A stretch of 64,000 nt of DNA, taken from NCBI GenBank assembly GCA_964187785.1, contig OZ076414.1:68138001-68202000 (forward strand), in the 5' to 3' direction. Numbering within the stretch: the stretch's first letter is position 1; the number at the start of each line of letters is the position of its first letter. The notes under the pieces are model-generated. The model saw nothing but the letters and a program-made list of their open reading frames with translations. It was not told where the DNA came from and searched no databases. The stretch comes from Amphiscolops sp. MND2022 (lineage: Eukaryota). The position numbers were made by a program, and so were the translations under genes. This document shows, piece after piece, positions 40,325 to 51,071 of the stretch.

Positions 40325-43300
40325 TTATAGTACGCATAATCCTTTTTCCAGTTTGTTGGGGGGTTTTCTCGTAAATTGTATTTACTTTTCCTGGGGGAAT
40401 TGGGGGGCGGGATTTTTTCACTTTCATGATTGTTTGAATCGACATTGGGTACTGTATTTTCTGGGTGTTCATCTGGGTTGGTTACTGAGGGGCTTCTGGG
40501 TCAAGCGTTAGGGTGTCCTTTTGGGCGAGTTGTTCTTTGGGGGACTCGGGGATTGCTATGGTGGGTTCTGTCTGAAAAGAGGTGCTGGGCGTTTCGGCCA
40601 ATTCCTCGGAATCCGACTGCCATGCTTGAGCGTATAGGTCATCGTGAAAGACGTCTAGTTCCTTGTCTGGAATATAATCTTTGGGCAAGACGTGTTTTTC
40701 CGGGAGTGTTTTGTCGGTCGGGCATGGTTTTAGACGGAATCTGTGAAGGATTTGTGTATGGTTCGTCTGTAATTTCCGGATGAGGTAATTGTTATTCGGG
40801 AGCACTTTGACTACTATGTAGGGTCCTGCCCAGAGGTATTCCTTGGATGGGATTTTGGTACTTTGTGTGTTCGCTCTGGGGTGAAGTGCGTAGCAGTATT
40901 CGTTGACGTGGAGGGGATGAGCTTTCGCTTTTTTGTCGTAAAATTGTTTGTATCGTTTGTAAGATTGCAATAAATTTCTGCTCACAGTCTCTTTAATCTG
41001 TTGTGTTTTGTGTACGATGTCCTCTCCCAGATTTGTTGTTGCGGTCGATTGTCTTTCGCTTCGTATGTCAAACTTGAGACCCAGGACGTTATAAGGGATT
41101 CTCCCGTGAAACACTCGGCTAGGTTTGCACCCCAGGGCAGAGTGGTAGGACGTGTTGTAATTGAGTGTTGCTATGGCCACTTACTGGTGCCACATGGTTC
41201 GCCTTTCTCCCGTTGAGATTTTGAATGATTCGTTTGGGATGCGTGACTTTCTCTCTAAGATTCCGATGGTTTGGGCATGTTTGGTTGTAGCATGTTTGAG
41301 TTGTATGCCCAGGGTCCTGGTCGCGTCTGCCATGACTTCAGACATGAATTGGGTGCCTTTGTCGGTAATGACAGTGGTTGGAAGGTAGGCGTGGGGAGTC
41401 ATGATGTCTATAAGGACTCGGGCTACCGTTGGGGCTTCCGTTTTGACTACATTGTACGTAAAAAGGTAGCGAGAGAAGACGTCCATTGCCGTTATTTTTG
41501 CATTACAGCCCCCGGAGGGTTCGTCAAAGGGAACAATGTCCATTTGGAGGGTGTCTTCAGGGCCTAGGGCCAATTTGGACGTATCAATCATCGGTGGCGT
41601 GATGGACCGTTTGTCCGTACGTTTGGTTTGCATGCATTCGGTGCATCGGGAGATGTGGGTAGTAATACTTCTCTCGGCATTGTTGTATTACTTTGGCTAT
41701 TCCATGGTGCGCTAGAATGAATGATTCGATTAGGTGCTCAGGTAGCTGAATCTGTAGGAATTTGACTTTCCCTGCGTGATCATAGTACTGCCGGTATAGC
41801 AGTCCATCTTTTAGTTTTATTCCGCTGTCCTGGGCAATGTATCGAGCTGCGCGGGGGTCGCTTGCTAAGAGTTGCTCGTTGTAGGGTTCTTTGAGCGGAG
41901 TTTATAATTTCTCAGGACATTGTCTTGGTCTTGTTGTTGTCTCATGGTTTTCAATGGACCATCGTATTCGTTGGTGGTTTCGAGGAGAGTTCGGGTTACA
42001 AGTACTTCCGTTTGAAATATGGTAACCTCCTGGTCACTGGATGTCGTTTCGGTGATGGTGCCACCTGAGTGGGGTTTTTTATTATTGTCATCAATATTTT
42101 TTTTTCGTGCTCGCAGTTTGCGCTCGCAGATTTGTTCCTCAGTTTCCGTGTCGTCGTCGGGCATGAAGAAGAATTGATTTTCTTCTGCGACGTCGGACGA
42201 CTGGATGTTGACCTGATAGGTGTGGTGCGTATGTCGTCCCTTATCGTGAGGTGGACCTTGTCTTTTGGCTGAATGTCGAGGCGGGACAGGAAGTCCGCTG
42301 CCGTGTTCATTTTGCCCGGCAGGTGGGTAATAGTGAAATGGAACTGGAGGACATCGCATGCGTTCCATAGAGCTGGAGGGATGATTTTTGTCTAGAAAAA
42401 ACGTGTCACAGACTTGTTGTCCGTGAGGACGACAACCGGTTTGGTTGATTCCCATAGTATGTGGCTATACTCCATGAAAGCGAAGTAGATAGCCAGGAAT
42501 TCTTTTGAGTATATGGACAGATTGATCTGAGACGAAGAGAACGTCTTTGAACCGAACGCCACTGGTGCGTAGGTTTTCCGGACTGAGCTTATTTTCTCTT
42601 CTGGGTTTTCTTCAATCATGAGGGCGTAACCCGCGTTTTTAAAATTGGCATCAGTCATGAGGATGTACTGTCTGTTGGGCATGGGTTGTTTGAGCCACAG
42701 GCCACACGCATTGTCTAGGGATTTGTTGATGTTGGAGAAGCAGTCCATGATCTCGTTTGTGATCTTGATGGGTTTTTCGGTTTTGATGAGCTCGTGGAAT
42801 GGGGCTATCGTTTCGGAAAGTCTCGGGATGTAATTCCGGTAGAAGTTAACAAATCCGATGTAGCGTTGGAGGCCTTTTTTGGTTTTTGGAAATGATAATT
42901 TTTGCAAATAGTTCTGGATTTTCCCGTCTTGTGGAGCAATCCATTTCGGTGATACGGTTCGCCCAAGGAATTGGACTTCCTTGGCGCCGAACTGGCATTT
43001 GGCCATTGTCAAACGCAAACCTGCTTCTCGAACGCACTGAAAAATCTCACGCAGGTTGGTCTTCAACTCCTCGGCGTTGTGGGCGGCAATTCCGATGTCG
43101 TCGACGTACTGCACGCATTTGTCAGCTTTGATGACTCGATCGAGATATTCTCTCATGAAGCTCGAGAAGGAGGAGAGGGACCTGCTGAGCCCCTGTGCGA
43201 GTCGCAGGTACGCAAATGTTCGACTGGCGAAAATGAAAGCTAGTAGTTCTACCGACTTTTTGTCTGTCATTTGCAAGACGTGATAAGCCTGGGAGCAGTC

Positions 43301-44205
43301 TAGCTTGCAAAATAACTTCTTTCCGGCGAGGTGTTGAGTTGCGTCGGAGAGGGTGCAGACTGGGTGGTTGTTGTTCGTGTAATCGTCAGCTATTAGATCG
43401 TTGATCTTTCTAAGGTCAACTAGCAGTCAAAGTCGTCCATTTTGCTTTCGTTGAGCAAATATGGGGCTAGCGTATTTGCTGAACGGGAGAGTGGTTATGA
43501 TGCCGTAGTAGTGCATCAAAGCTAGTTCTACCGTGAGGTCTTCTCTGAGGTTCACAGGACAGGGTAGGCTCTGCGTATAAGCTGGTTGATCGTTCTTTGG
43601 GGTCAGCTTTTTCTTGAAGTCGTGGTTGACGCCTATGTCTAGGTGGTGGCGCGCGAATATGTCGTGGTATTCGACAAGAATGTTCTCGATGTCCCTTCTC
43701 TCGTGGCTGTCTAATTGGGAGTTTTCCCACTTGAAATTTTTGAGGAAATTTTGTCTGTCTTGAGGGCTGGTTGTTGGGTTGGGTTTCTGGATTTCCTCCA
43801 ATTTTTCGATCTCTCTGAGGATCCTTCTTTGAACGGGAGTATGGGTGGAGGGATCACCCGGATTGTCTGAGGTTGGGAACCAGAACTAAGGCTAAGGGTA
43901 AGGGTTTGATGTTTTTTGCTTCATTGGGGGTTGTGATGTGGAATTCGGCCACTACTGTGTTCTTCTTGATGGTGAAAGGGGTGGGCGAGGTATTCGGTAT
44001 TTGGATCGGCTCCTTCATTTCGTGGACAGTGGACAGAGAACTTGCGATTACTATTGGTTTATCTTCCGTGTAGGCTGGTATCGGGTGGATGACACCGGTG
44101 GTGTCTGCGATTGATCTGATGTTGACTTAGGCTTCGACCGTGATGCATTGGTCAGCGGCCAAAGTTGTTTGATTGAGGATGGTCACTTATTGTGGTTTCG
44201 TTGGT
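40325..44205 (-). pseudogene. pol: pol of element B, 3' part (RT, RNase H, integrase)
   Basis: LAQGL, YVDDI, LMTDA, ELAIYF-type RNase H; HHG...C..C; MDIV, DVFSRY, ITDKGTQF, ILER; AGPY; terminal YNLRENPQPN. Confidence 0.92.
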
Positions 44206-44237
44206 TGTTCGGACATCTTAAATAGTTTCCGATAAAT

Positions 44238-47200
44238 ATGTGTGATGATGAAAGTCTGGGCGCTCCGCGCCACAATTCAACCAGCGGTGGAAAGGACTAC
44301 TATCCATCTATTGACGAATTGCTGGCTGCCGACTCAAATGGCTTCAAACGACTGACTGGAAAGCTCACAAAAGACTCAATTCTTTGCCTCCTGCGTGACT
44401 CTCTTAGTCATCTCAAACAAGCTAAGTCAACTTCTGATCGCTTTTCTACATTAGAGAATAAATTAGACAATTTAATTACAAACACTGAAACAAGCCCAAC
44501 TGTAACACCCCCTTCTGCTTCATCAGGAAAATTACAATGGCCGATATCTTTAAAGCCTCTCTCGATGAAAGAGACTACAATGAACAAGCTAATAAAACCA
44601 TCGTCTTTTATAACATTGTAGAAACCAAAGATGTAAATGGCAATGTTGATCCTACAATTAGGGAAGTATTTGATGATTGAAAGTGCATACAGACTTGGGA
44701 AGAAAAGTGAATCCAATACACGTCCTCGCCCCATTGAAGTTAAGTTATCTACTGAATTCGACAAGAGGAAAGTTATGGCTAACGCAAGACTGCTAAAAGG
44801 ATCCAACTTGTTTGTTAAACCCAAACTCCTATGGAAAGAGCGCCTCATCGAGAAAACTTTGCTTAGTCTGTGTTATGAACTTACCCAAAATGGTTTCTCC
44901 AAGAATCTATTTCGTATTCGAGATCTGAAACTTTTCTACAATGGACATCATATCGACTCCTCATCTCCTATAAAAGACATCATTAAACAGCTTCCCGATC
45001 TAAACCCTGTTGCTCAGTCACTACCTACTTCTACTAAATGTTGTTTGATCAACACCCGCAGTTTAGTTTCCAGCTTTAAAAGAGCATCTCTCCTCGACTG
45101 GACAATGATTAACTCCGTGGACTTACTTTTCATTACTGAAACATGGTTTCATAACTCTATTGACAGCAAATGTCTTTCCCTTTTTGGACAGTTTGAAGTT
45201 CTTTGTCGAACTGACCGAAAAAGTGAATGGCAAGTTCAGATAATATCTGCACTGAAAGAGTTATATATTTTAAACAACGAGTTTCCAGACAATAATGCTA
45301 TCGCAGAAAAACTTCAATCTCTTGGGTTGGACGCAAGATATGCTAAGAAAAGTATGCCTTTTGCTCTAAAAGTAAAATCCGATGTGACTGCCAAAGGTCA
45401 ATCAGTTTTTGATGAGTCTACTCAGTTTTCTGGTAGACATGGCGGTGTGGCAATTTTGGCGAAAAAATCTCTACATTTGCACCTCATACCATTAGAATTA
45501 CCAGCCACATATGATTTTGCTTCCCTTCTTATCTGGTTGCAAACCTCTGGTTCAGCTCTCATCTTCCTATTGGTCTTTCTACCTCCTTCAACTAGTTCTT
45601 ACGTCATCTCTCCGCAAGAACTAAGCAATTGTATCGAACATGCTAAACAATCATCGTCATTGTTGATTCCCTCCGGCTATACCTGCAGTTTTTGTTTACT
45701 AGGAGATTTAAATTTGCCTGACACAGATTGGAACTCAATGTATTCAACTTCCTCCTTCGAGAACCAATATCTCGACATATTTGTATCTCATGGTCTCTCT
45801 GCTTCCATCAACATTCCAACTCATAAAGCTGGTAACACTCTTGATAACATTTTGCTTGAGAATGTGAATCAATTCGATGATTTTATGGTAATTAAAGATC
45901 TATTTCTTAGTGATCACTATCCAATTCTGTTCAATTGTTTGATCTCAAGCTCTTCTTCGAAGTCTACTCCTCTCGCCAGCTCATATTCTTTCAATTCAGC
46001 AAAGGAGATTTCTTCATTTATTGATTCTTGGTCTCATTTCACTTTCACAGATTTTCCTTCGTCTGCAACGGTTGACTCTTTCTATTCTCAATTGAACTTT
46101 ATTATTCCCCAAACCTTCAGTCGAAAAACAAAAAAACGCTTGAATAACCCGTTCTATTACTCCTCTCATTCAATGCATTGTTTAAACATAAAAGAAACTG
46201 CCCAAAGGAAATGTATTCGAAACCCCTCGGCTAGAAATCTTTTGATGCTTGAGCGGGCTAAGGAGGATTTTTCGATGTCGGTTGAGCTGGACAAAATCTG
46301 TTTTTTCTCTGGTTCCTTCACACAAAACACCTCTGATGCTTTCAGCCTCCTGAATTCGCTGAAAATTCAATGTCTCCCCTCCTCAATGAAATACAATTCG
46401 ACTCTTCTCACAAATGACTTAGACATTGCAAATAGTTTCAATGATTACTTCTCTTCGTCATTCAATAGCCAAACTTATCCTTCTTCAGCCCCTCTTTGTC
46501 CTTTCGATATTTTTCTTGAGGACATATTTGACTCTATGACAATTGAATCAATCTATAGGAAAATCTTGGCAATGAAATAAGCCGGAACAGTTCTCTTCGA
46601 TAACCTCCCCCCTCTTCTAGTCAAATTATGTCCCGAGTTGTTTGCGCATCTTTTGTTTATTTTGTTCTCTGCTATCATCCACACTTTAGTTTACCCTGGT
46701 TTTTGGAAAACTGCATTTATAAGACCTCTGCATAAATCAGATAGCAAAACAGATATTACCAACTATAGGCCCATTAGCCTATTACCCAAAATTTCCCTCA
46801 TTTTCGAAAAGAACATGTTTGACTTCTTGTTTACCAGAATAAAGCATAGGATTACTCCTCGTCAACATGGTTTTCAATCAAGGAAAAGTGCTGTGCTTCA
46901 GTTAATTGATTTCCTAGAGACTGCTCGGCTGAAACACTCTCCTAACCTTTACACAGTGTACTTGGATTATGCCAAGGCTTTTGATAAAGTTCCTTTTGAA
47001 GTTCTACTTCGCAAACTTCGTTTATTTGGGTTGGATGAAAACTTCCTGCATCTTATCAATTCTTACCTTTCTGACAGACAGCAAATTGTCATAGTGCAAA
47101 ACCAAATGTCTCGCCAACTGCCAGTACTAAGTGGCGTACCTCAGGGTTCGGTCTTAGGCCCTTTGTTGTTCCTCATATTTATAAATGACATGCCTTCCAT

Positions 47201-48077
47201 ATTCCTAGATGCTATTGTGTGGCTTTTTGCTGATGACCTTAAACTGCTGTTTGATTCCTTGGATTTTGAATCAGATCTTGTACGTCTCCATTCCTGGAAT
47301 ATCGCAAATGGGATGCTAGCAAACGTTCTCAAAACTAAATGTCTTATTTTCCGTGGTAATGTATCAGTTCTCCTTGGTGATGAAGTTGTTGAGAATGTAA
47401 AGCATCAGAAAGATCTTGGGATCATCATCAGTCATGATTTTAAGTGGACCAATCATTTGTCAAAGAAGTTAACCAAAGCTCAAAATTTATACTTTTTCAT
47501 TCGAAGCACAGTTCCATGGAGTTCTCCCTCTGCAATTAAATTCAATATTTACTCAAGCACTATTCTCTCTGTAATCATGTATGGCTCCCCGGTCTGGTTG
47601 GCGAATTTTAGTTTACTCAAAAGACTAGAGTGTTTCCAAAAACGTTGTTTCAAATGGATTTTCGGCTCAACATTCACTTATGAAGAGCAACTTGCGAAAC
47701 ATCAGTGTCTTCCAATTAGTCTCCATCTCGAAATGCGGACACTATTTTTACTGTTGGATATACTTGACAACAAATATCTGTTTGATCCATCAAATTACAT
47801 CCAGTTTCAGAATCTGAAGACTACTTCTAGGAGGAAAACAACGAACCCCCTCAAAGTAATTGGAATTTCACACCTTCAAGAAAGCTCTTTTTTTGTGAGA
47901 GCCGTAAACTTTTTCAACTACCTCTACAGGCATGACATCATAGATTTCCATGATCCAAGAAATAAATCCAATATAAAAAAGTTTCTGCTTGCAAAAGATT
48001 TTAACATGGATTTAAGATGCAGTTATTATATTTGCTGCTACTGTAGCTCCTGCAGACCACTGTTAAGTCTTTGCTAA
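44238..48077 (+). pseudogene. LINE ORF1 (RRM-type) fused to APE endonuclease and RT; one frameshift, one stop
   Basis: AYRLG..RPRPIEV (ORF1); INTRS, ITETWF, GGVAI, GDLN, LDNIL, SDHYPI (APE); YRPISLL, QHGF, LDYAKAFD, GVPQGSVLGP, FADD (RT); TAA at 46578 is in frame with the RT ORF. Confidence 0.9.
45222..45428 (+). other. In-frame 207-bp insert resembling the C-terminal region of cytosolic leucyl-tRNA synthetase
   Basis: Splits DRK|SGRHGG of the APE domain; SEWQVQIISALKELYILNNEFPDNNAIAEKLQSLGLDARYAKKSMPFALKVKSDVTAKGQSVFD vs recalled human LARS1 [65 protein letters not shown]. Confidence 0.78.
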
Positions 48078-48312
48078 CTAATCTCAGCATCGGTGTTCTT
48101 TCCTTGGTGCAAGCCCGTGTCGGGTTGTTCCATTAAAGTTCATCGCACGATCTTTGGGTTGGGACTTGAATATTTTAAATTTAGCGTTGTGCTTGCTTTG
48201 TGTTATTTAATATTCATGTAAAACATTAATTTATATTTAAAAAAATGTACTTCATTGCTATTCTTGGCTCTGAAAAGAGAATAAAGTCTTATATCTCTCT
48301 CTCTCTCTGTTC

Positions 48313-51071
48313 ATCAGATACAGGTTTTATTGCGTGGGTTATGTGAGGGAAGTGGAGGAGTCCCTGACAGGCATCCAGGATGGCGCTATTGGACTTTAGG
48401 AAGGTGAGGCCTGGGATGGGGCCAGTGATTTTGCTAGCTACACTGAATGCGTCCTTAAACGTCCAATCACCTATTTCAAACTGTATTTGGATTGTCTTGA
48501 TCGGGGTTTCTTTGCCGCCATTTGCGACCTGTAGTTTGAAAGGCGGCGCATCAGATTCCTGCAAGATGTTAGTGGGGCTCATGTTTTTGAGTTTTTGGTA
48601 TTCATTCTCGGGCATGCAATTGACCAAGGCTCCTGAGTAGTTGAGGGCACCTATGGAGAAGTGTTGGAATTCCATTGGTGCGAATAGCATGCGTCTCTTC
48701 TGTTTAATTGCGATTGCCAAGAATATTGGTAGGCATTGCTCTCCCCCTGGATTGTTTGTAGTGGTGATATTTGCTTCTTGGTTGGCATCTAGTTGTAATA
48801 TCATATTGTTGTCACCTTGTTGGGCATTTCTGGGCCTGGGGTTTCCATCAATGTTGGGTTGCTGGTGTTGATTGATCTCACAAGTCTGTGCCCGTTTGAT
48901 GCGTCTTGGTTTTGGTGCTGAGTTAGCGGTGATTGTAGTTGCGGGGTTGTTGGGGGGGATTCCCCAGCTTTGTGTGTGCCTGGTACGTCGGTGATGGAAG
49001 TTCCTGAGTCGATGGCACATTTCTTTTTTGGGTGTTCAGGACTTTGAGGGGATGATGGCGATGACGTCATTGCAGCCCGGATTTCGTTTGTGGCTGCCGG
49101 AACTCTTGAGGGTGACCTGTGTTTGCTCATGATGGGGGTATGTGGTTTGAGGATTGGTTGGAGAGGTATCGCAGGCGGTGGGACGATGACTTGTATCTCC
49201 TGACCTTGTTCCTCGGCTTGTTGTACGGGTGAATGACTGTCGTTGCCATCATCTCGCCTTTTGGTGTTGTCCAAATTCATGTTCGTCCTTTTGACGATGT
49301 CGTGGAAGGGTACATTGATCGTCTCTTTGAATGTTAGGGTTACTTGGTCGTATAAGTCAGGGTTGTGGTAAGGGTCACAATCGTAGTCTGGGTCATGTAT
49401 ATAAGTGAGAGAAGTGGAACTGGGTGGGAGAGGGCCTCTAGTTGTGTTGTATTGTTGGGGGTTCTCTTGATACCATTCCGGGTAAGGTAGTTTGTCGATG
49501 GTAGATTTGTTGAATTTTATGAGGCGCCTTATGAGCCATCTCCGCTGCCAATCGGTAGATGGTTCACCGGAACACTCCGCAAACATTTCTAAATCATGGT
49601 CCTTCGGGGGTTCAGATGTTGTATAGAATCGATAATCGATGTAATCCCCGAAGCGAAGACGTGGCTTTAGGAGTTTTTTGACTCCTTTTCTTGTGGTGCC
49701 ATGGTTTGTGGCTGTTGCATTGGGATAGTTTGTGGATGTTGGGCGATGGGAATATTGTTGGGTGGCGTTGTTTTGGGCGTTTTCCACCATGTGGGGCGGT
49801 TTACCCAATTCGCTCCTGAGTATCAGTCTTCCGTCTCGTGGCTCATTTTGCCGCATGTTTCTCACGGTGTGGCTTGTGTTGTTGTGTGGGTTCTTTGGGA
49901 TTGTTTGTCCCTGTTGGTTTTGCGGCAGTTTCGTAGTAGATGTCCCGGATTGCCGCACCCGAAGCATGTTCCCGTTGTTCTGGGGGGTTTGTTCTGTTGT
50001 TGCTGTAGTCTGGGTTCAAGGATGTGTACCACTGTTATTGATGTGCTGTCGGTAGTGGCGAGTCCATTGAGCTCAATTTCCCGCTCCAAGTGCTGTACCA
50101 TGGTTTCGTACGTTTCTGTTCCGAGTCTGGCCTAGTTTAGGACCTTCTTGAGGTGTGGTGGCATCTTGGCATAGAAGGAGGTTTCTATGAAACGGAGATT
50201 GTCCTCCCCGTAAGCTTCTTGAGCAAACTTTTGGTACTGCTCTAGAAATCTGGGAATGTTTGTTGGCTTGGGTTGAACGACAGATTTTCCCATTTGCAGC
50301 GTGCTGTTGCCACTGACTGTTTTCTTACATATTGTCGGCGGAAGCCCGCAAAGATATCATTCAGGTGTTCTCGTGTTGCTTCGGTCATGTTCCTGAATGT
50401 TTGTAATGCTTCGCCTCTCAGGAGAGAATGAAAGTAATGAATCTTTTCCTCTTCTGTGATATTCGGGTACACTTTGAGGCGTGTCTGAAAAAGGTCCTCA
50501 AAGTGCTTTAACTTGTCTGTTTTTCCGTCGAATGTTGGCATAGTGGTAGACATGGCGTTTGGTAGCCTGGGGACGCCTGAGTTGTGGCTGGTTGCGTTTG
50601 TAACGATTGTAGTAGTTTATCGATGATGTCATCGTGATACCTCTGGTTTGGAGGTGGCAGGCTTGATGATCGCTGATGGTTGTTGTCTTGCTGGTTCGCT
50701 GAAACTCCTGTCACCATGTGTTGACTCATGTCCTGGCAGAACTCCCCTAATTCAATTGGTCTGGGTTCAAGACCTTCGTTCTCAGCGCTCACTCTATTTG
50801 GACCATAATTTGTGTTGCCAGGCGTTCTATCAGTCAACGAATCTATTTTAGACGTTAAGTTTTCTATCATTTTAAGGATTTCCCGTTGGCCGGTTTCAGT
50901 TTCCTTAATTCTTTTACTCACTGACTTTTCATTTTTCTCCGACAATTCTGCGAAGTCTTTGTCAGAAATACTGGGGGCGTTTTCTGTTCTCATACTCGAG
51001 GAATCAGGTTCATCCACTGAGCTGGTAATTGACTCTCGTCTAGCTTTCCACTTGGAACTTCGCTCAGGCAT
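48313..51071 (-). pseudogene. gag: gag, long linker and protease of element B
   Basis: MPERSS start; MPTFDGK...HSLLRGEALQTF capsid; CFGCGNPGHLLRNC knuckle; degenerate protease ALNYSGALVN, ILGLTFL-like flap region. Confidence 0.88.

What the first reader, a model, noticed from the sequence alone, without database searches (positions are those of the whole stretch)
45222..45428. LINE endonuclease carries an in-frame captured piece of leucyl-tRNA synthetase
Exactly 69 stop-free codons are inserted into the short RxDR...GGV loop of the APE domain. They match recalled LARS1 C-terminal residues (W-Q, NN..PDN..IA..L.S, Y.KK.MPF, K..G..D). Likely a template switch onto host mRNA during reverse transcription (inference). 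If several copies share it, the chimeric LINE was mobile with a host domain grafted in.
Basis: partly seen in the sequence, partly recalled or inferred. Interest (0 to 1): 0.85.

Follow-up and report, generated by a model that had tools for sequence, protein, structure and literature searches.

The report
LINE endonuclease with grafted LeuRS domain
A family of jumping genes (a LINE retrotransposon) in this animal genome carries, inside its DNA-cutting enzyme, a complete small domain copied long ago from the host's leucyl-tRNA synthetase, and it kept spreading with that graft to about 30 places.

Summary
Window 45222-45428 encodes 69 stop-free codons that match Pfam PF24810, the RagD-binding domain (RBD) of cytoplasmic leucyl-tRNA synthetase LARS1 (E 9.5e-14). 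They also match human LARS1 structures by sequence and by fold (TM 0.85).

The piece sits between the R-x-D-R strand and the G-G-V strand of the APE endonuclease of a full-length 4.1-kb LINE (window 44218-48308). Sixteen related LINE endonucleases have a clean gap there, including the closest relative found (52% identity).

About 30 loci on 12 chromosome-scale contigs carry the same graft, at 81-100% nucleotide identity to the window copy. No copy of the family lacks it where the site survives. At least one copy keeps both reading frames open.

The grafts form one clade, nested with the LARS1 of the host and its nearest relatives. This points to a single capture from the host lineage's own gene, which is now only about 62% identical.

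In the active lineage the graft changed at about a third of the rate seen in dead copies, like the flanking endonuclease.

The capture route (RNA template switch or DNA repair) and any function of the graft remain open. I found no report of a tRNA-synthetase domain in a LINE in the papers searched.

The parts
44218..48308 (+). Full-length copy (about 4.1 kb) of the chimeric non-LTR retrotransposon.
   Evidence: It is 98% identical over 4115 bp to two other full-length copies, with the same first and last bases and unrelated flanks.
44238..45017 (+). ORF1 (about 260-270 aa, no Pfam match). This copy carries a private in-frame stop at 44619-44621.
   Evidence: Collapsed read contigs show another base at 44619.
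45018..45020 (+). ORF1/ORF2 junction codon. It is TCA in this copy and TGA followed by CTA in 25 of 27 copies. ORF1 and ORF2 share one frame.
   Evidence: Read contigs show G at 45019.
45021..45221 (+). N-terminal part of the APE endonuclease, with the catalytic Glu of T-E-T-W, up to the R-T-D-R-K strand.
   Evidence: Alignment A3, structure model and fold hits to TRAS1 and L1 endonucleases.
45222..45428 (+). The 69-codon graft: the LARS1 RagD-binding domain, a three-helix module.
45429..45950 (+). C-terminal part of the APE endonuclease (G-G-V strand, G-D-x-N and S-D-H catalytic motifs).
   Evidence: Pfam Exo_endo_phos_2. Invariant columns G141, G142, D229, N231, D298 and H299 in A3.
46578..46580 (+). 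Private in-frame TAA that splits ORF2 in this copy.
   Evidence: Read contigs show C at 46579. ORF2 is open for 1018 aa in another copy.
46746..47345 (+). Reverse transcriptase domain, with an F-A-D-D motif.
   Evidence: Pfam RVT_1, E 5.1e-25.
48075..48308 (+). ORF2 stop, 3' UTR with AATAAA at 48280-48285, and a (TC)n tail at 48294-48308.

Best explanation
An autonomous APE-type LINE captured, once, the roughly 210-nt segment of its host lineage's cytoplasmic leucyl-tRNA synthetase gene that encodes the whole RagD-binding domain (human residues about 946-1015). The segment went in, in sense and in frame, at a two-residue surface loop of the endonuclease. That loop corresponds to the loop in human L1 endonuclease whose Lys70 touches the uncut DNA strand. 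The chimera stayed retrotransposition-competent and founded a family that was active over a long period and until recently. ORF2, graft included, is probably made by read-through of a TGA-CTA stop behind ORF1. Shown: identity of the piece, insertion point, single origin, multi-copy spread, intact catalytic motifs, retained fold and slower-than-neutral change. Inferred: the graft folds as an independent three-helix module on the rim of the DNA-binding face. My split on its role is about 60% a tolerated passenger kept foldable so that it does not poison the endonuclease, and about 30% a tether to a host protein or nucleic acid that affects targeting or RNP assembly. The capture route is open: two template switches during reverse transcription, or filler DNA at a break.
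For: Identity of the piece:
- PF24810 at E 9.5e-14.
- Human LARS1 by sequence at E 1.4e-4.
- Fold match to 6LPF with TMq 0.85.
- Human RBD is residues 946-1015 (PMC8260868).

Insertion point:
- Clean gap in 16 insert-less LINE endonucleases (A3).
- The closest relative found, L076, has 52% identity in the APE and lacks the graft.
- The profile alignment places the site at the L1-EN loop around residues 67-71.
- Lys70 of that loop binds strand-2 phosphates (PMC8565326).

Mobility:
- 38 matches, about 30 loci, on contigs C1-C10, C12 and C13 plus unplaced contigs.
- All have APE flanks.
- Three full-length copies share their termini but have different flanks.
- One copy has open frames of 272 and 1018 aa.
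- Junction-spanning read contigs occur in two samples.

Single origin from host-lineage LARS1:
- The LINE inserts form one clade (100/99).
- That clade is nested with the host-clade LARS1 sequences (98/98).
- Old copies keep the LARS-like 70th codon.

Constraint:
- Change in the active lineage relative to decay in dead copies is 0.36 for the graft and 0.30 for its flanks.
- 13 of 14 residues invariant across LARS1 are kept; the one changed is at the junction.

Structure:
- APE plus graft model has pLDDT 86 and pTM 0.79. The graft forms helices 69-85, 91-100 and 105-125.
- The core matches TRAS1 and L1 endonucleases.
Against: - No RNA data exist for this organism in the runs served, so expression is untested.
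- Several loci are post-insertion tandem DNA duplicates that share private defects (L011/L012, L014/L015, L021/L022). Independent insertions are therefore fewer than loci.
- The constraint estimate assumes a star-like history of the old copies.
- The residue-retention test is only suggestive (Fisher p 0.09).
- Mobilisation in trans by sister LINEs cannot be strictly excluded.
- No target-site duplications could be read with confidence.
- The family is known from this genome only. The ENA proteins that match it come from an assembly of the same genome.
Confidence: 0.9

Rival explanations
1. The graft is a functional module. The LARS1 RBD gives the endonuclease a new binding partner, such as a Rag-type GTPase, another host protein, or an RNA or DNA feature. 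This changes where or how the element integrates or assembles its RNP.
For: - The graft equals a complete, independently folding protein-interaction domain.
- It sits in the loop homologous to the DNA-contacting Lys70 loop of L1-EN.
- It evolves as slowly as the catalytic flanks in the active lineage.
- It keeps the LARS-invariant residues.
- It persisted through the family's whole recorded history.
Against: - No partner was tested.
- The net charge is about -1 (my count on the translation), so it is not an obvious nucleic-acid binder.
- The three full-length copies show no common target sequence.
- The same conservation is expected if the domain merely has to stay folded.
Confidence: 0.3
2. 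The graft is a tolerated passenger in a permissive surface loop. Selection acts only to keep it in frame and folded, so that the endonuclease is not disrupted.
For: - The loop varies in length among LINE endonucleases, with 0-12 extra residues in database relatives (alignment A2).
- The family is small (about 30 loci) next to insert-less sister families with hundreds of 945-947-aa copies.
- A low-confidence linker at residues 132-138 suggests a loosely attached module.
Against: A pure passenger would be expected to shrink or be lost over the time in which dead copies accumulated about 9-10% substitutions. Only one codon was lost.
Confidence: 0.55
3. The grafted endonuclease is dead. The copies were spread by segmental duplication or in trans by the machinery of sister LINEs.
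For: Three pairs of copies are clearly tandem DNA duplicates. Sister LINE families with intact ORFs are abundant.
Against: - Copies lie on 12 chromosome-scale contigs, with canonical identical 5' and 3' termini and a (TC)n tail.
- All catalytic residues are present.
- A 1018-aa ORF2 is open in a young copy.
- The coding sequence of the lineage changed at about 0.3 of the decay rate.
Confidence: 0.07
4. The resemblance to LARS1 is chance, an assembly chimera, or a transfer from the LINE to LARS1.
For: None found.
Against: - The profile score is 24 bits above the Pfam cut-off, with fold TM 0.85.
- Identical junctions occur in about 30 loci and in read-derived contigs of two samples.
- The RBD is present in LARS1 from humans and molluscs, and in Atlas LARS clusters listed as mostly Streptophyta. 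The LINE clade is nested inside host-clade LARS1.
Confidence: 0.01

Closest known systems
APE-type LINEs that acquired accessory domains. Examples from my own knowledge: the archaeal-like RNase H in plant L1, and PHD or esterase domains in ORF1 of CR1-like elements. From PMC6338049: viral SF1 helicase domains in TRAS and Jockey-type LINEs.
   Same: This is also an autonomous non-LTR element that gained a foreign protein module and kept transposing. Sister families in this genome carry a PHD finger in ORF1.
   Different: The module here is a fragment of a host housekeeping aminoacyl-tRNA synthetase. It is inserted inside the catalytic endonuclease fold, not appended between or after domains. 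No paper in the searched library links LINEs with a LeuRS domain.
Human LARS1 RagD-binding domain (PDB 6KQY, 6LPF, 6KR7; residues 946-1015).
   Same: Same Pfam family, same three-helix fold, and the same boundaries to within 1-2 residues.
   Different: It is not part of a synthetase. It is about 33% identical to the human domain and about 62% to the host's own. RagD binding is untested.
Engineered loop-exchange variants of the L1 endonuclease (PDB 2V0R, 2V0S).
   Same: A surface element of a LINE endonuclease is replaced or extended while the fold is kept. These entries are among the best structural matches of the model.
   Different: Those are laboratory swaps of the beta-hairpin that probes the minor groove. 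This is a natural 69-70-residue domain insertion in a different loop, the equivalent of L1-EN residues 66-72.
LINE-mediated transduction and template-switch chimeras (from my own knowledge: L1 3' transduction, U6/L1 chimeric retrocopies).
   Same: Host sequence is joined to LINE sequence, plausibly during reverse transcription.
   Different: Those events give dead-end copies with host sequence outside the LINE ORFs. Here the host piece became a heritable, in-frame part of ORF2 of an active lineage.

Membership tests
APE-type non-LTR retrotransposon (LINE) | N-terminal apurinic/apyrimidinic-like endonuclease with its catalytic residues. | tested here: met
   Pfam Exo_endo_phos_2. E40, D229, N231, D298 and H299 are invariant in A3. 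The fold matches TRAS1 and L1 endonucleases with TMt 0.77-0.79.
APE-type non-LTR retrotransposon (LINE) | Reverse transcriptase domain downstream of the endonuclease in the same ORF. | tested here: met
   RVT_1 at E 5e-25 in the window copy and 3e-24 in L061. F-A-D-D motif in the translation.
APE-type non-LTR retrotransposon (LINE) | Dispersed multi-copy family with a defined 3' end and simple-repeat tail, no LTRs. | tested here: met
   About 30 loci on 12 chromosome-scale contigs. Identical termini and a (TC)n tail in three full-length copies. Read depth rises toward the 3' end, as expected if many copies are 5'-truncated (rough).
APE-type non-LTR retrotransposon (LINE) | Target-site duplications flanking insertions. 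| tested here: inconclusive
   Only three full-length copies with flanks could be read. There are weak, imperfect matches only.
A named LINE clade (CR1/Jockey-like) | Placement in an RT phylogeny with reference elements. | not tested
   No reference set was available. The only hints are the microsatellite tail, a PHD finger in a sister family's ORF1, and generic 'jockey' names among distant hits.
PF24810 RBD_LARS1 | Score above the Pfam gathering threshold. | tested here: met
   51.7 bits against a 27-bit cut-off for the 69 aa. 46 bits within the full ORF.
PF24810 RBD_LARS1 | Three-helix fold of the solved human domain. | tested here: met
   Model pLDDT 83.6. 6LPF match with TMq 0.85 and probability 1.00.
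PF24810 RBD_LARS1 | Sits between the anticodon-binding and ubiquitin-like domains of a class I LeuRS. | tested here: not met
   It is flanked by endonuclease strands, not by Anticodon_1 and ULD_3. The host gene L024 has that normal order. The graft is a homologue of the domain, not part of a LeuRS.
PF24810 RBD_LARS1 | Binds RagD GTPase. | not testable with these tools
   No binding test was run. The host Rag sequence was not retrieved.

The most novel reading that the evidence does not exclude
A retrotransposon has co-opted a host protein-interaction domain, the Rag-GTPase-binding module of LeuRS, into the DNA-binding face of its endonuclease. It would use this as a tether that couples integration or RNP assembly to a host partner. 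That would be a natural precedent for retargeting LINE endonucleases by domain insertion.
Probability: 0.25. Interest if true: 0.85.

Novelty: new variant of a known kind. Interest (0 to 1): 0.66.

Why it matters
LINE endonucleases are generally treated as compact catalytic folds whose short loops set target choice. This is a natural case in which a whole 70-residue host domain was grafted into one of those loops and the element remained mobile for a long time.

It shows that this loop tolerates large insertions, which is useful for engineering retargeted LINE or TPRT tools. It is a clear example of a host housekeeping-gene fragment becoming a heritable part of a transposon protein. It also gives a testable question: does the LeuRS RBD bring a binding partner to the integration machinery?

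It gives a dated marker as well: one capture, followed by loss of one codon, for tracing this LINE lineage in related species.

Tried and rejected
- **Word-based protein search restricted to the graft:** it found only one LARS1 relative and no other grafted LINE.
- **Exhaustive phmmer of the 69 aa against 1.84 billion representatives:** 11 hits. The LINE-type hits all trace to ENA assembly ERZ25074608, which is 100% identical to this genome over 3.2 kb. They are not evidence from another species.
- **L059, the only host copy of a closer sister lineage (55% identity):** a small tandem repeat has replaced the region around the insertion site, so it cannot show whether that lineage had the graft. 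It is a singleton.
- **Plain pairwise dN/dS against the window copy:** 0.61 for the graft, 0.57 and 0.76 for the flanks. This is dominated by neutral decay of dead copies, so I replaced it with the old-versus-young comparison.
- **A mixed alignment of LINE endonucleases with LARS segments:** it misaligned the junction, so I did not use it for folding.
- **RNA evidence:** no RNA run is served for this organism.
- **Read contigs:** they are collapsed repeats and showed no empty-site allele.
- **blastn between the graft and the host LARS1 exon:** nothing found, so junction microhomology and synonymous dating were not attempted.
- **Organism identity:** not established. Run names are coded. The best named LARS1 relative is a bivalve at 38%.

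Full report
**Observation**

Window 45222-45428 reads as 69 sense codons. They lie inside a 647-aa open frame, 44637-46580. That frame, the 127-aa ORF before it (44238-44621) and the 479-aa ORF after it (46638-48077) all share one reading frame. They are separated only by single stops at 44619-44621 and 46578-46580.

Pfam finds RBD_LARS1 (PF24810, the 'Leucine--tRNA ligase, RagD-binding domain'). The 69 residues alone score E 9.5e-14 and 51.7 bits, against a cut-off of 27. The flanks match Exo_endo_phos_2, and RVT_1 lies downstream.

**The element**

Two other genomic copies (L061, L062) align to window 44218-48308 over 4115 bp at 98%. They share the same first and last bases but have unrelated flanks.

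The element starts about 20 nt before the ORF1 ATG. It ends in AATAAA, a short spacer and a (TC)n tail at 48294-48308.

In L061, ORF1 (272 aa) and ORF2 (1018 aa) are both open. ORF2 comprises the APE endonuclease, the graft, the RT and a Cys-rich C-terminus.

The window copy's two stops are private. Collapsed read contigs of the family show other bases at 44619 and 46579.

**Where the graft sits**

I aligned ORF2 with four sister LINE families of the same genome (33-41% identity). I also aligned it with the closest relative found anywhere, L076 from ENA assembly ERZ26859043, which is 52% identical in the endonuclease and 59% in the RT. Eleven database LINEs were added.

The graft is a single clean insertion between the strand ending R-x-D-R-(K) and the strand starting (S)-G-x-H-G-G-V. 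Sister ORF2s are 944-951 aa, against 1018 aa here.

A profile of these endonucleases aligns that loop to residues about 67-71 of human L1 endonuclease. In the L1-EN/DNA crystal structures, Lys70 of that loop helps bind phosphates -4 to -6 of the uncut strand (PMC8565326). The graft therefore sits on the rim of the DNA-binding face.

All catalytic residues are present.

An AlphaFold model of the first 325 residues of ORF2 has pLDDT 86 and pTM 0.79. The graft forms three helices (69-85, 91-100, 105-125), followed by a low-confidence linker at 132-138. The core matches the TRAS1 and L1 endonucleases with TMt 0.77-0.79.

**What the graft is**

The 69 residues hit human LARS1 chains at E 1.4e-4. 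They align to residues 947-1013 of the native 1176-residue chain. The human RBD is defined as residues 946-1015 (PMC8260868).

The captured piece is thus the whole domain and almost nothing else. A model of the graft alone (pLDDT 83.6) matches 6LPF with TMq 0.85 and probability 1.00. Nothing else scores below E 1.

**Spread**

A six-frame search of the host genome (1.07 Gb) gives 38 matches, or about 30 loci. They lie on contigs C1-C10, C12 and C13 and on unplaced contigs.

Every locus but one has endonuclease sequence on both sides with the same junctions. The exception is L024, the host LARS1 gene.

Nucleotide identity to the window copy runs from 81% to about 99%. No copy of the family with both flanks lacks the graft.

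Three pairs are post-insertion tandem DNA duplicates that share private defects: L011/L012, L014/L015 and L021/L022. Independent insertions are therefore somewhat fewer than loci.

Read-derived contigs from two samples span both junctions. Their depth is very roughly 18-25 times that of the single-copy flanks, a figure the tool warns is not a copy number.

**Source and age**

The host LARS1 gene lies on C1 (L024). It has the normal order Anticodon_1, RBD_LARS1, ULD_3. Its RBD is 62% identical to the graft, and blastn finds no nucleotide match.

LARS1 from three related organisms (P0001, P0013, P0014) is 58-65% identical to the graft. LARS1 from other taxa is 31-43% identical.

In a maximum-likelihood tree all LINE grafts form one clade (100/99). 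That clade groups with the host-clade LARS1 sequences (98/98). The order within the group is unresolved, and the stem leading to the LINE clade is long, 0.38 changes per site.

So there was one capture, from the LARS1 of the host's own lineage, a long time ago. The direction is LARS1 to LINE, because the domain is found in LARS1 from distant eukaryotes.

Old copies (L017-L020, L026, P0003) keep a 70th codon at the position where LARS1 has one. The young subfamily has lost it.

**Constraint**

Old copies differ more from each other (0.19 in the graft) than from the young copies (0.14). This is a star-like pattern. Splitting these distances gives two quantities:
- Decay of dead copies: about 0.095 per site in the graft.
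- Change in the active lineage: about 0.034 per site in the graft.

The ratio is 0.36 for the graft and 0.30 for the flanking endonuclease. Within this rough model, the graft has been conserved about as well as the catalytic domain.

Thirteen of the 14 positions invariant in nine LARS1 sequences are kept, and the one changed is the junction residue. By comparison, 17 of 54 variable positions differ from all four host-clade sequences (Fisher p 0.09, suggestive only).

**Mechanism of capture**

The RBD lies inside one 1.28-kb exon of the host gene. The region is also intron-free in two relatives. The absence of an intron in the graft therefore says nothing.

Two routes remain open:
- Two template switches during target-primed reverse transcription.
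- Filler DNA captured at a break in a LINE copy.

I lean slightly to the RNA route because the piece is in sense orientation. That is inference.

**Function**

Nothing here shows what the graft does. It may be a tolerated passenger that must stay folded, which I put at about 55-60%. It may be a tether to a host partner, at about 25-30%. A dead endonuclease mobilised in trans is unlikely, at about 7%. The evidence against that is the intact catalytic motifs, an open 1018-aa ORF2 and slower-than-neutral change in the lineage.

**Comparison with known systems**

LINEs are known to gain accessory domains. From my own knowledge these include RNase H, PHD and esterase domains. PMC6338049 reports viral helicase domains.

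A tRNA-synthetase fragment, and a whole domain inserted inside the endonuclease fold, did not turn up in the literature searches or among the 75 ORF2 relatives listed with their Pfam content. I class it as a new variant of a known kind.

**Limits**

- The organism is not identified.
- No RNA data are available.
- The family is known only from this genome.
- The LINE clade was not assigned.

Noticed in passing
window 45018-45023; L061:3583-3588; L063:1684-1689; L064:1674-1679; L065:1627-1632: ORF1 and ORF2 of this LINE group lie in one frame, separated by a single TGA followed by CTA, CTC or CTG. 25 of 27 copies of the grafted family have TGA-CTA; the window copy has TCA. From my own knowledge this is a leaky-stop context, so ORF2 is probably made as a read-through fusion with ORF1. 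Other first readers of this scan noted the same in other windows of this genome.
   Followed up: partly
G000:C7:27228382 and 27231962; C4:27518410 and 27520908; C5:52163548 and 52165909 (L011/L012, L014/L015, L021/L022): Pairs of grafted LINE copies lie 2.4-3.6 kb apart in the same orientation and share private stops or frameshifts. They are tandem DNA duplications made after insertion, not separate retrotranspositions.
   Followed up: partly
L059 (G000:C13:33448523-33451918, minus strand): This is the single degraded copy of a LINE lineage that is closer to the grafted family (55% aa identity) than the abundant sister families. A short tandem repeat has replaced the region between the T-E-T-W strand and the Y-x-P-P strand, which removes the insertion site.
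   Followed up: yes
L024 (G000:C1:51000164-51003370); L074; L075: The host LARS1 gene has very large exons and one intron of about 58 bp in its last 3.2 kb. In two related organisms LARS1 is called as a single 938-995-aa ORF. The C-terminal half is only about 38% identical to the best named animal LARS1, from a bivalve. The host lineage is therefore poorly sampled and fast-evolving.
   Followed up: partly
whole genome: All large contigs hit are C1-C13, and higher-numbered contigs look small (unplaced scaffolds). This suggests 13 chromosomes in a 1.07-Gb genome. The best named relative of the LINE ORF2 is from the ctenophore Mnemiopsis leidyi at 29%. The host's identity was not established.
   Followed up: no
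window 42392-43801 (-) and 48289-51071 (-): The LINE is flanked on both sides by minus-strand ORFs that look like parts of LTR-retrotransposon gag/pol. The LINE may have inserted into, or beside, an older LTR element.
   Followed up: no
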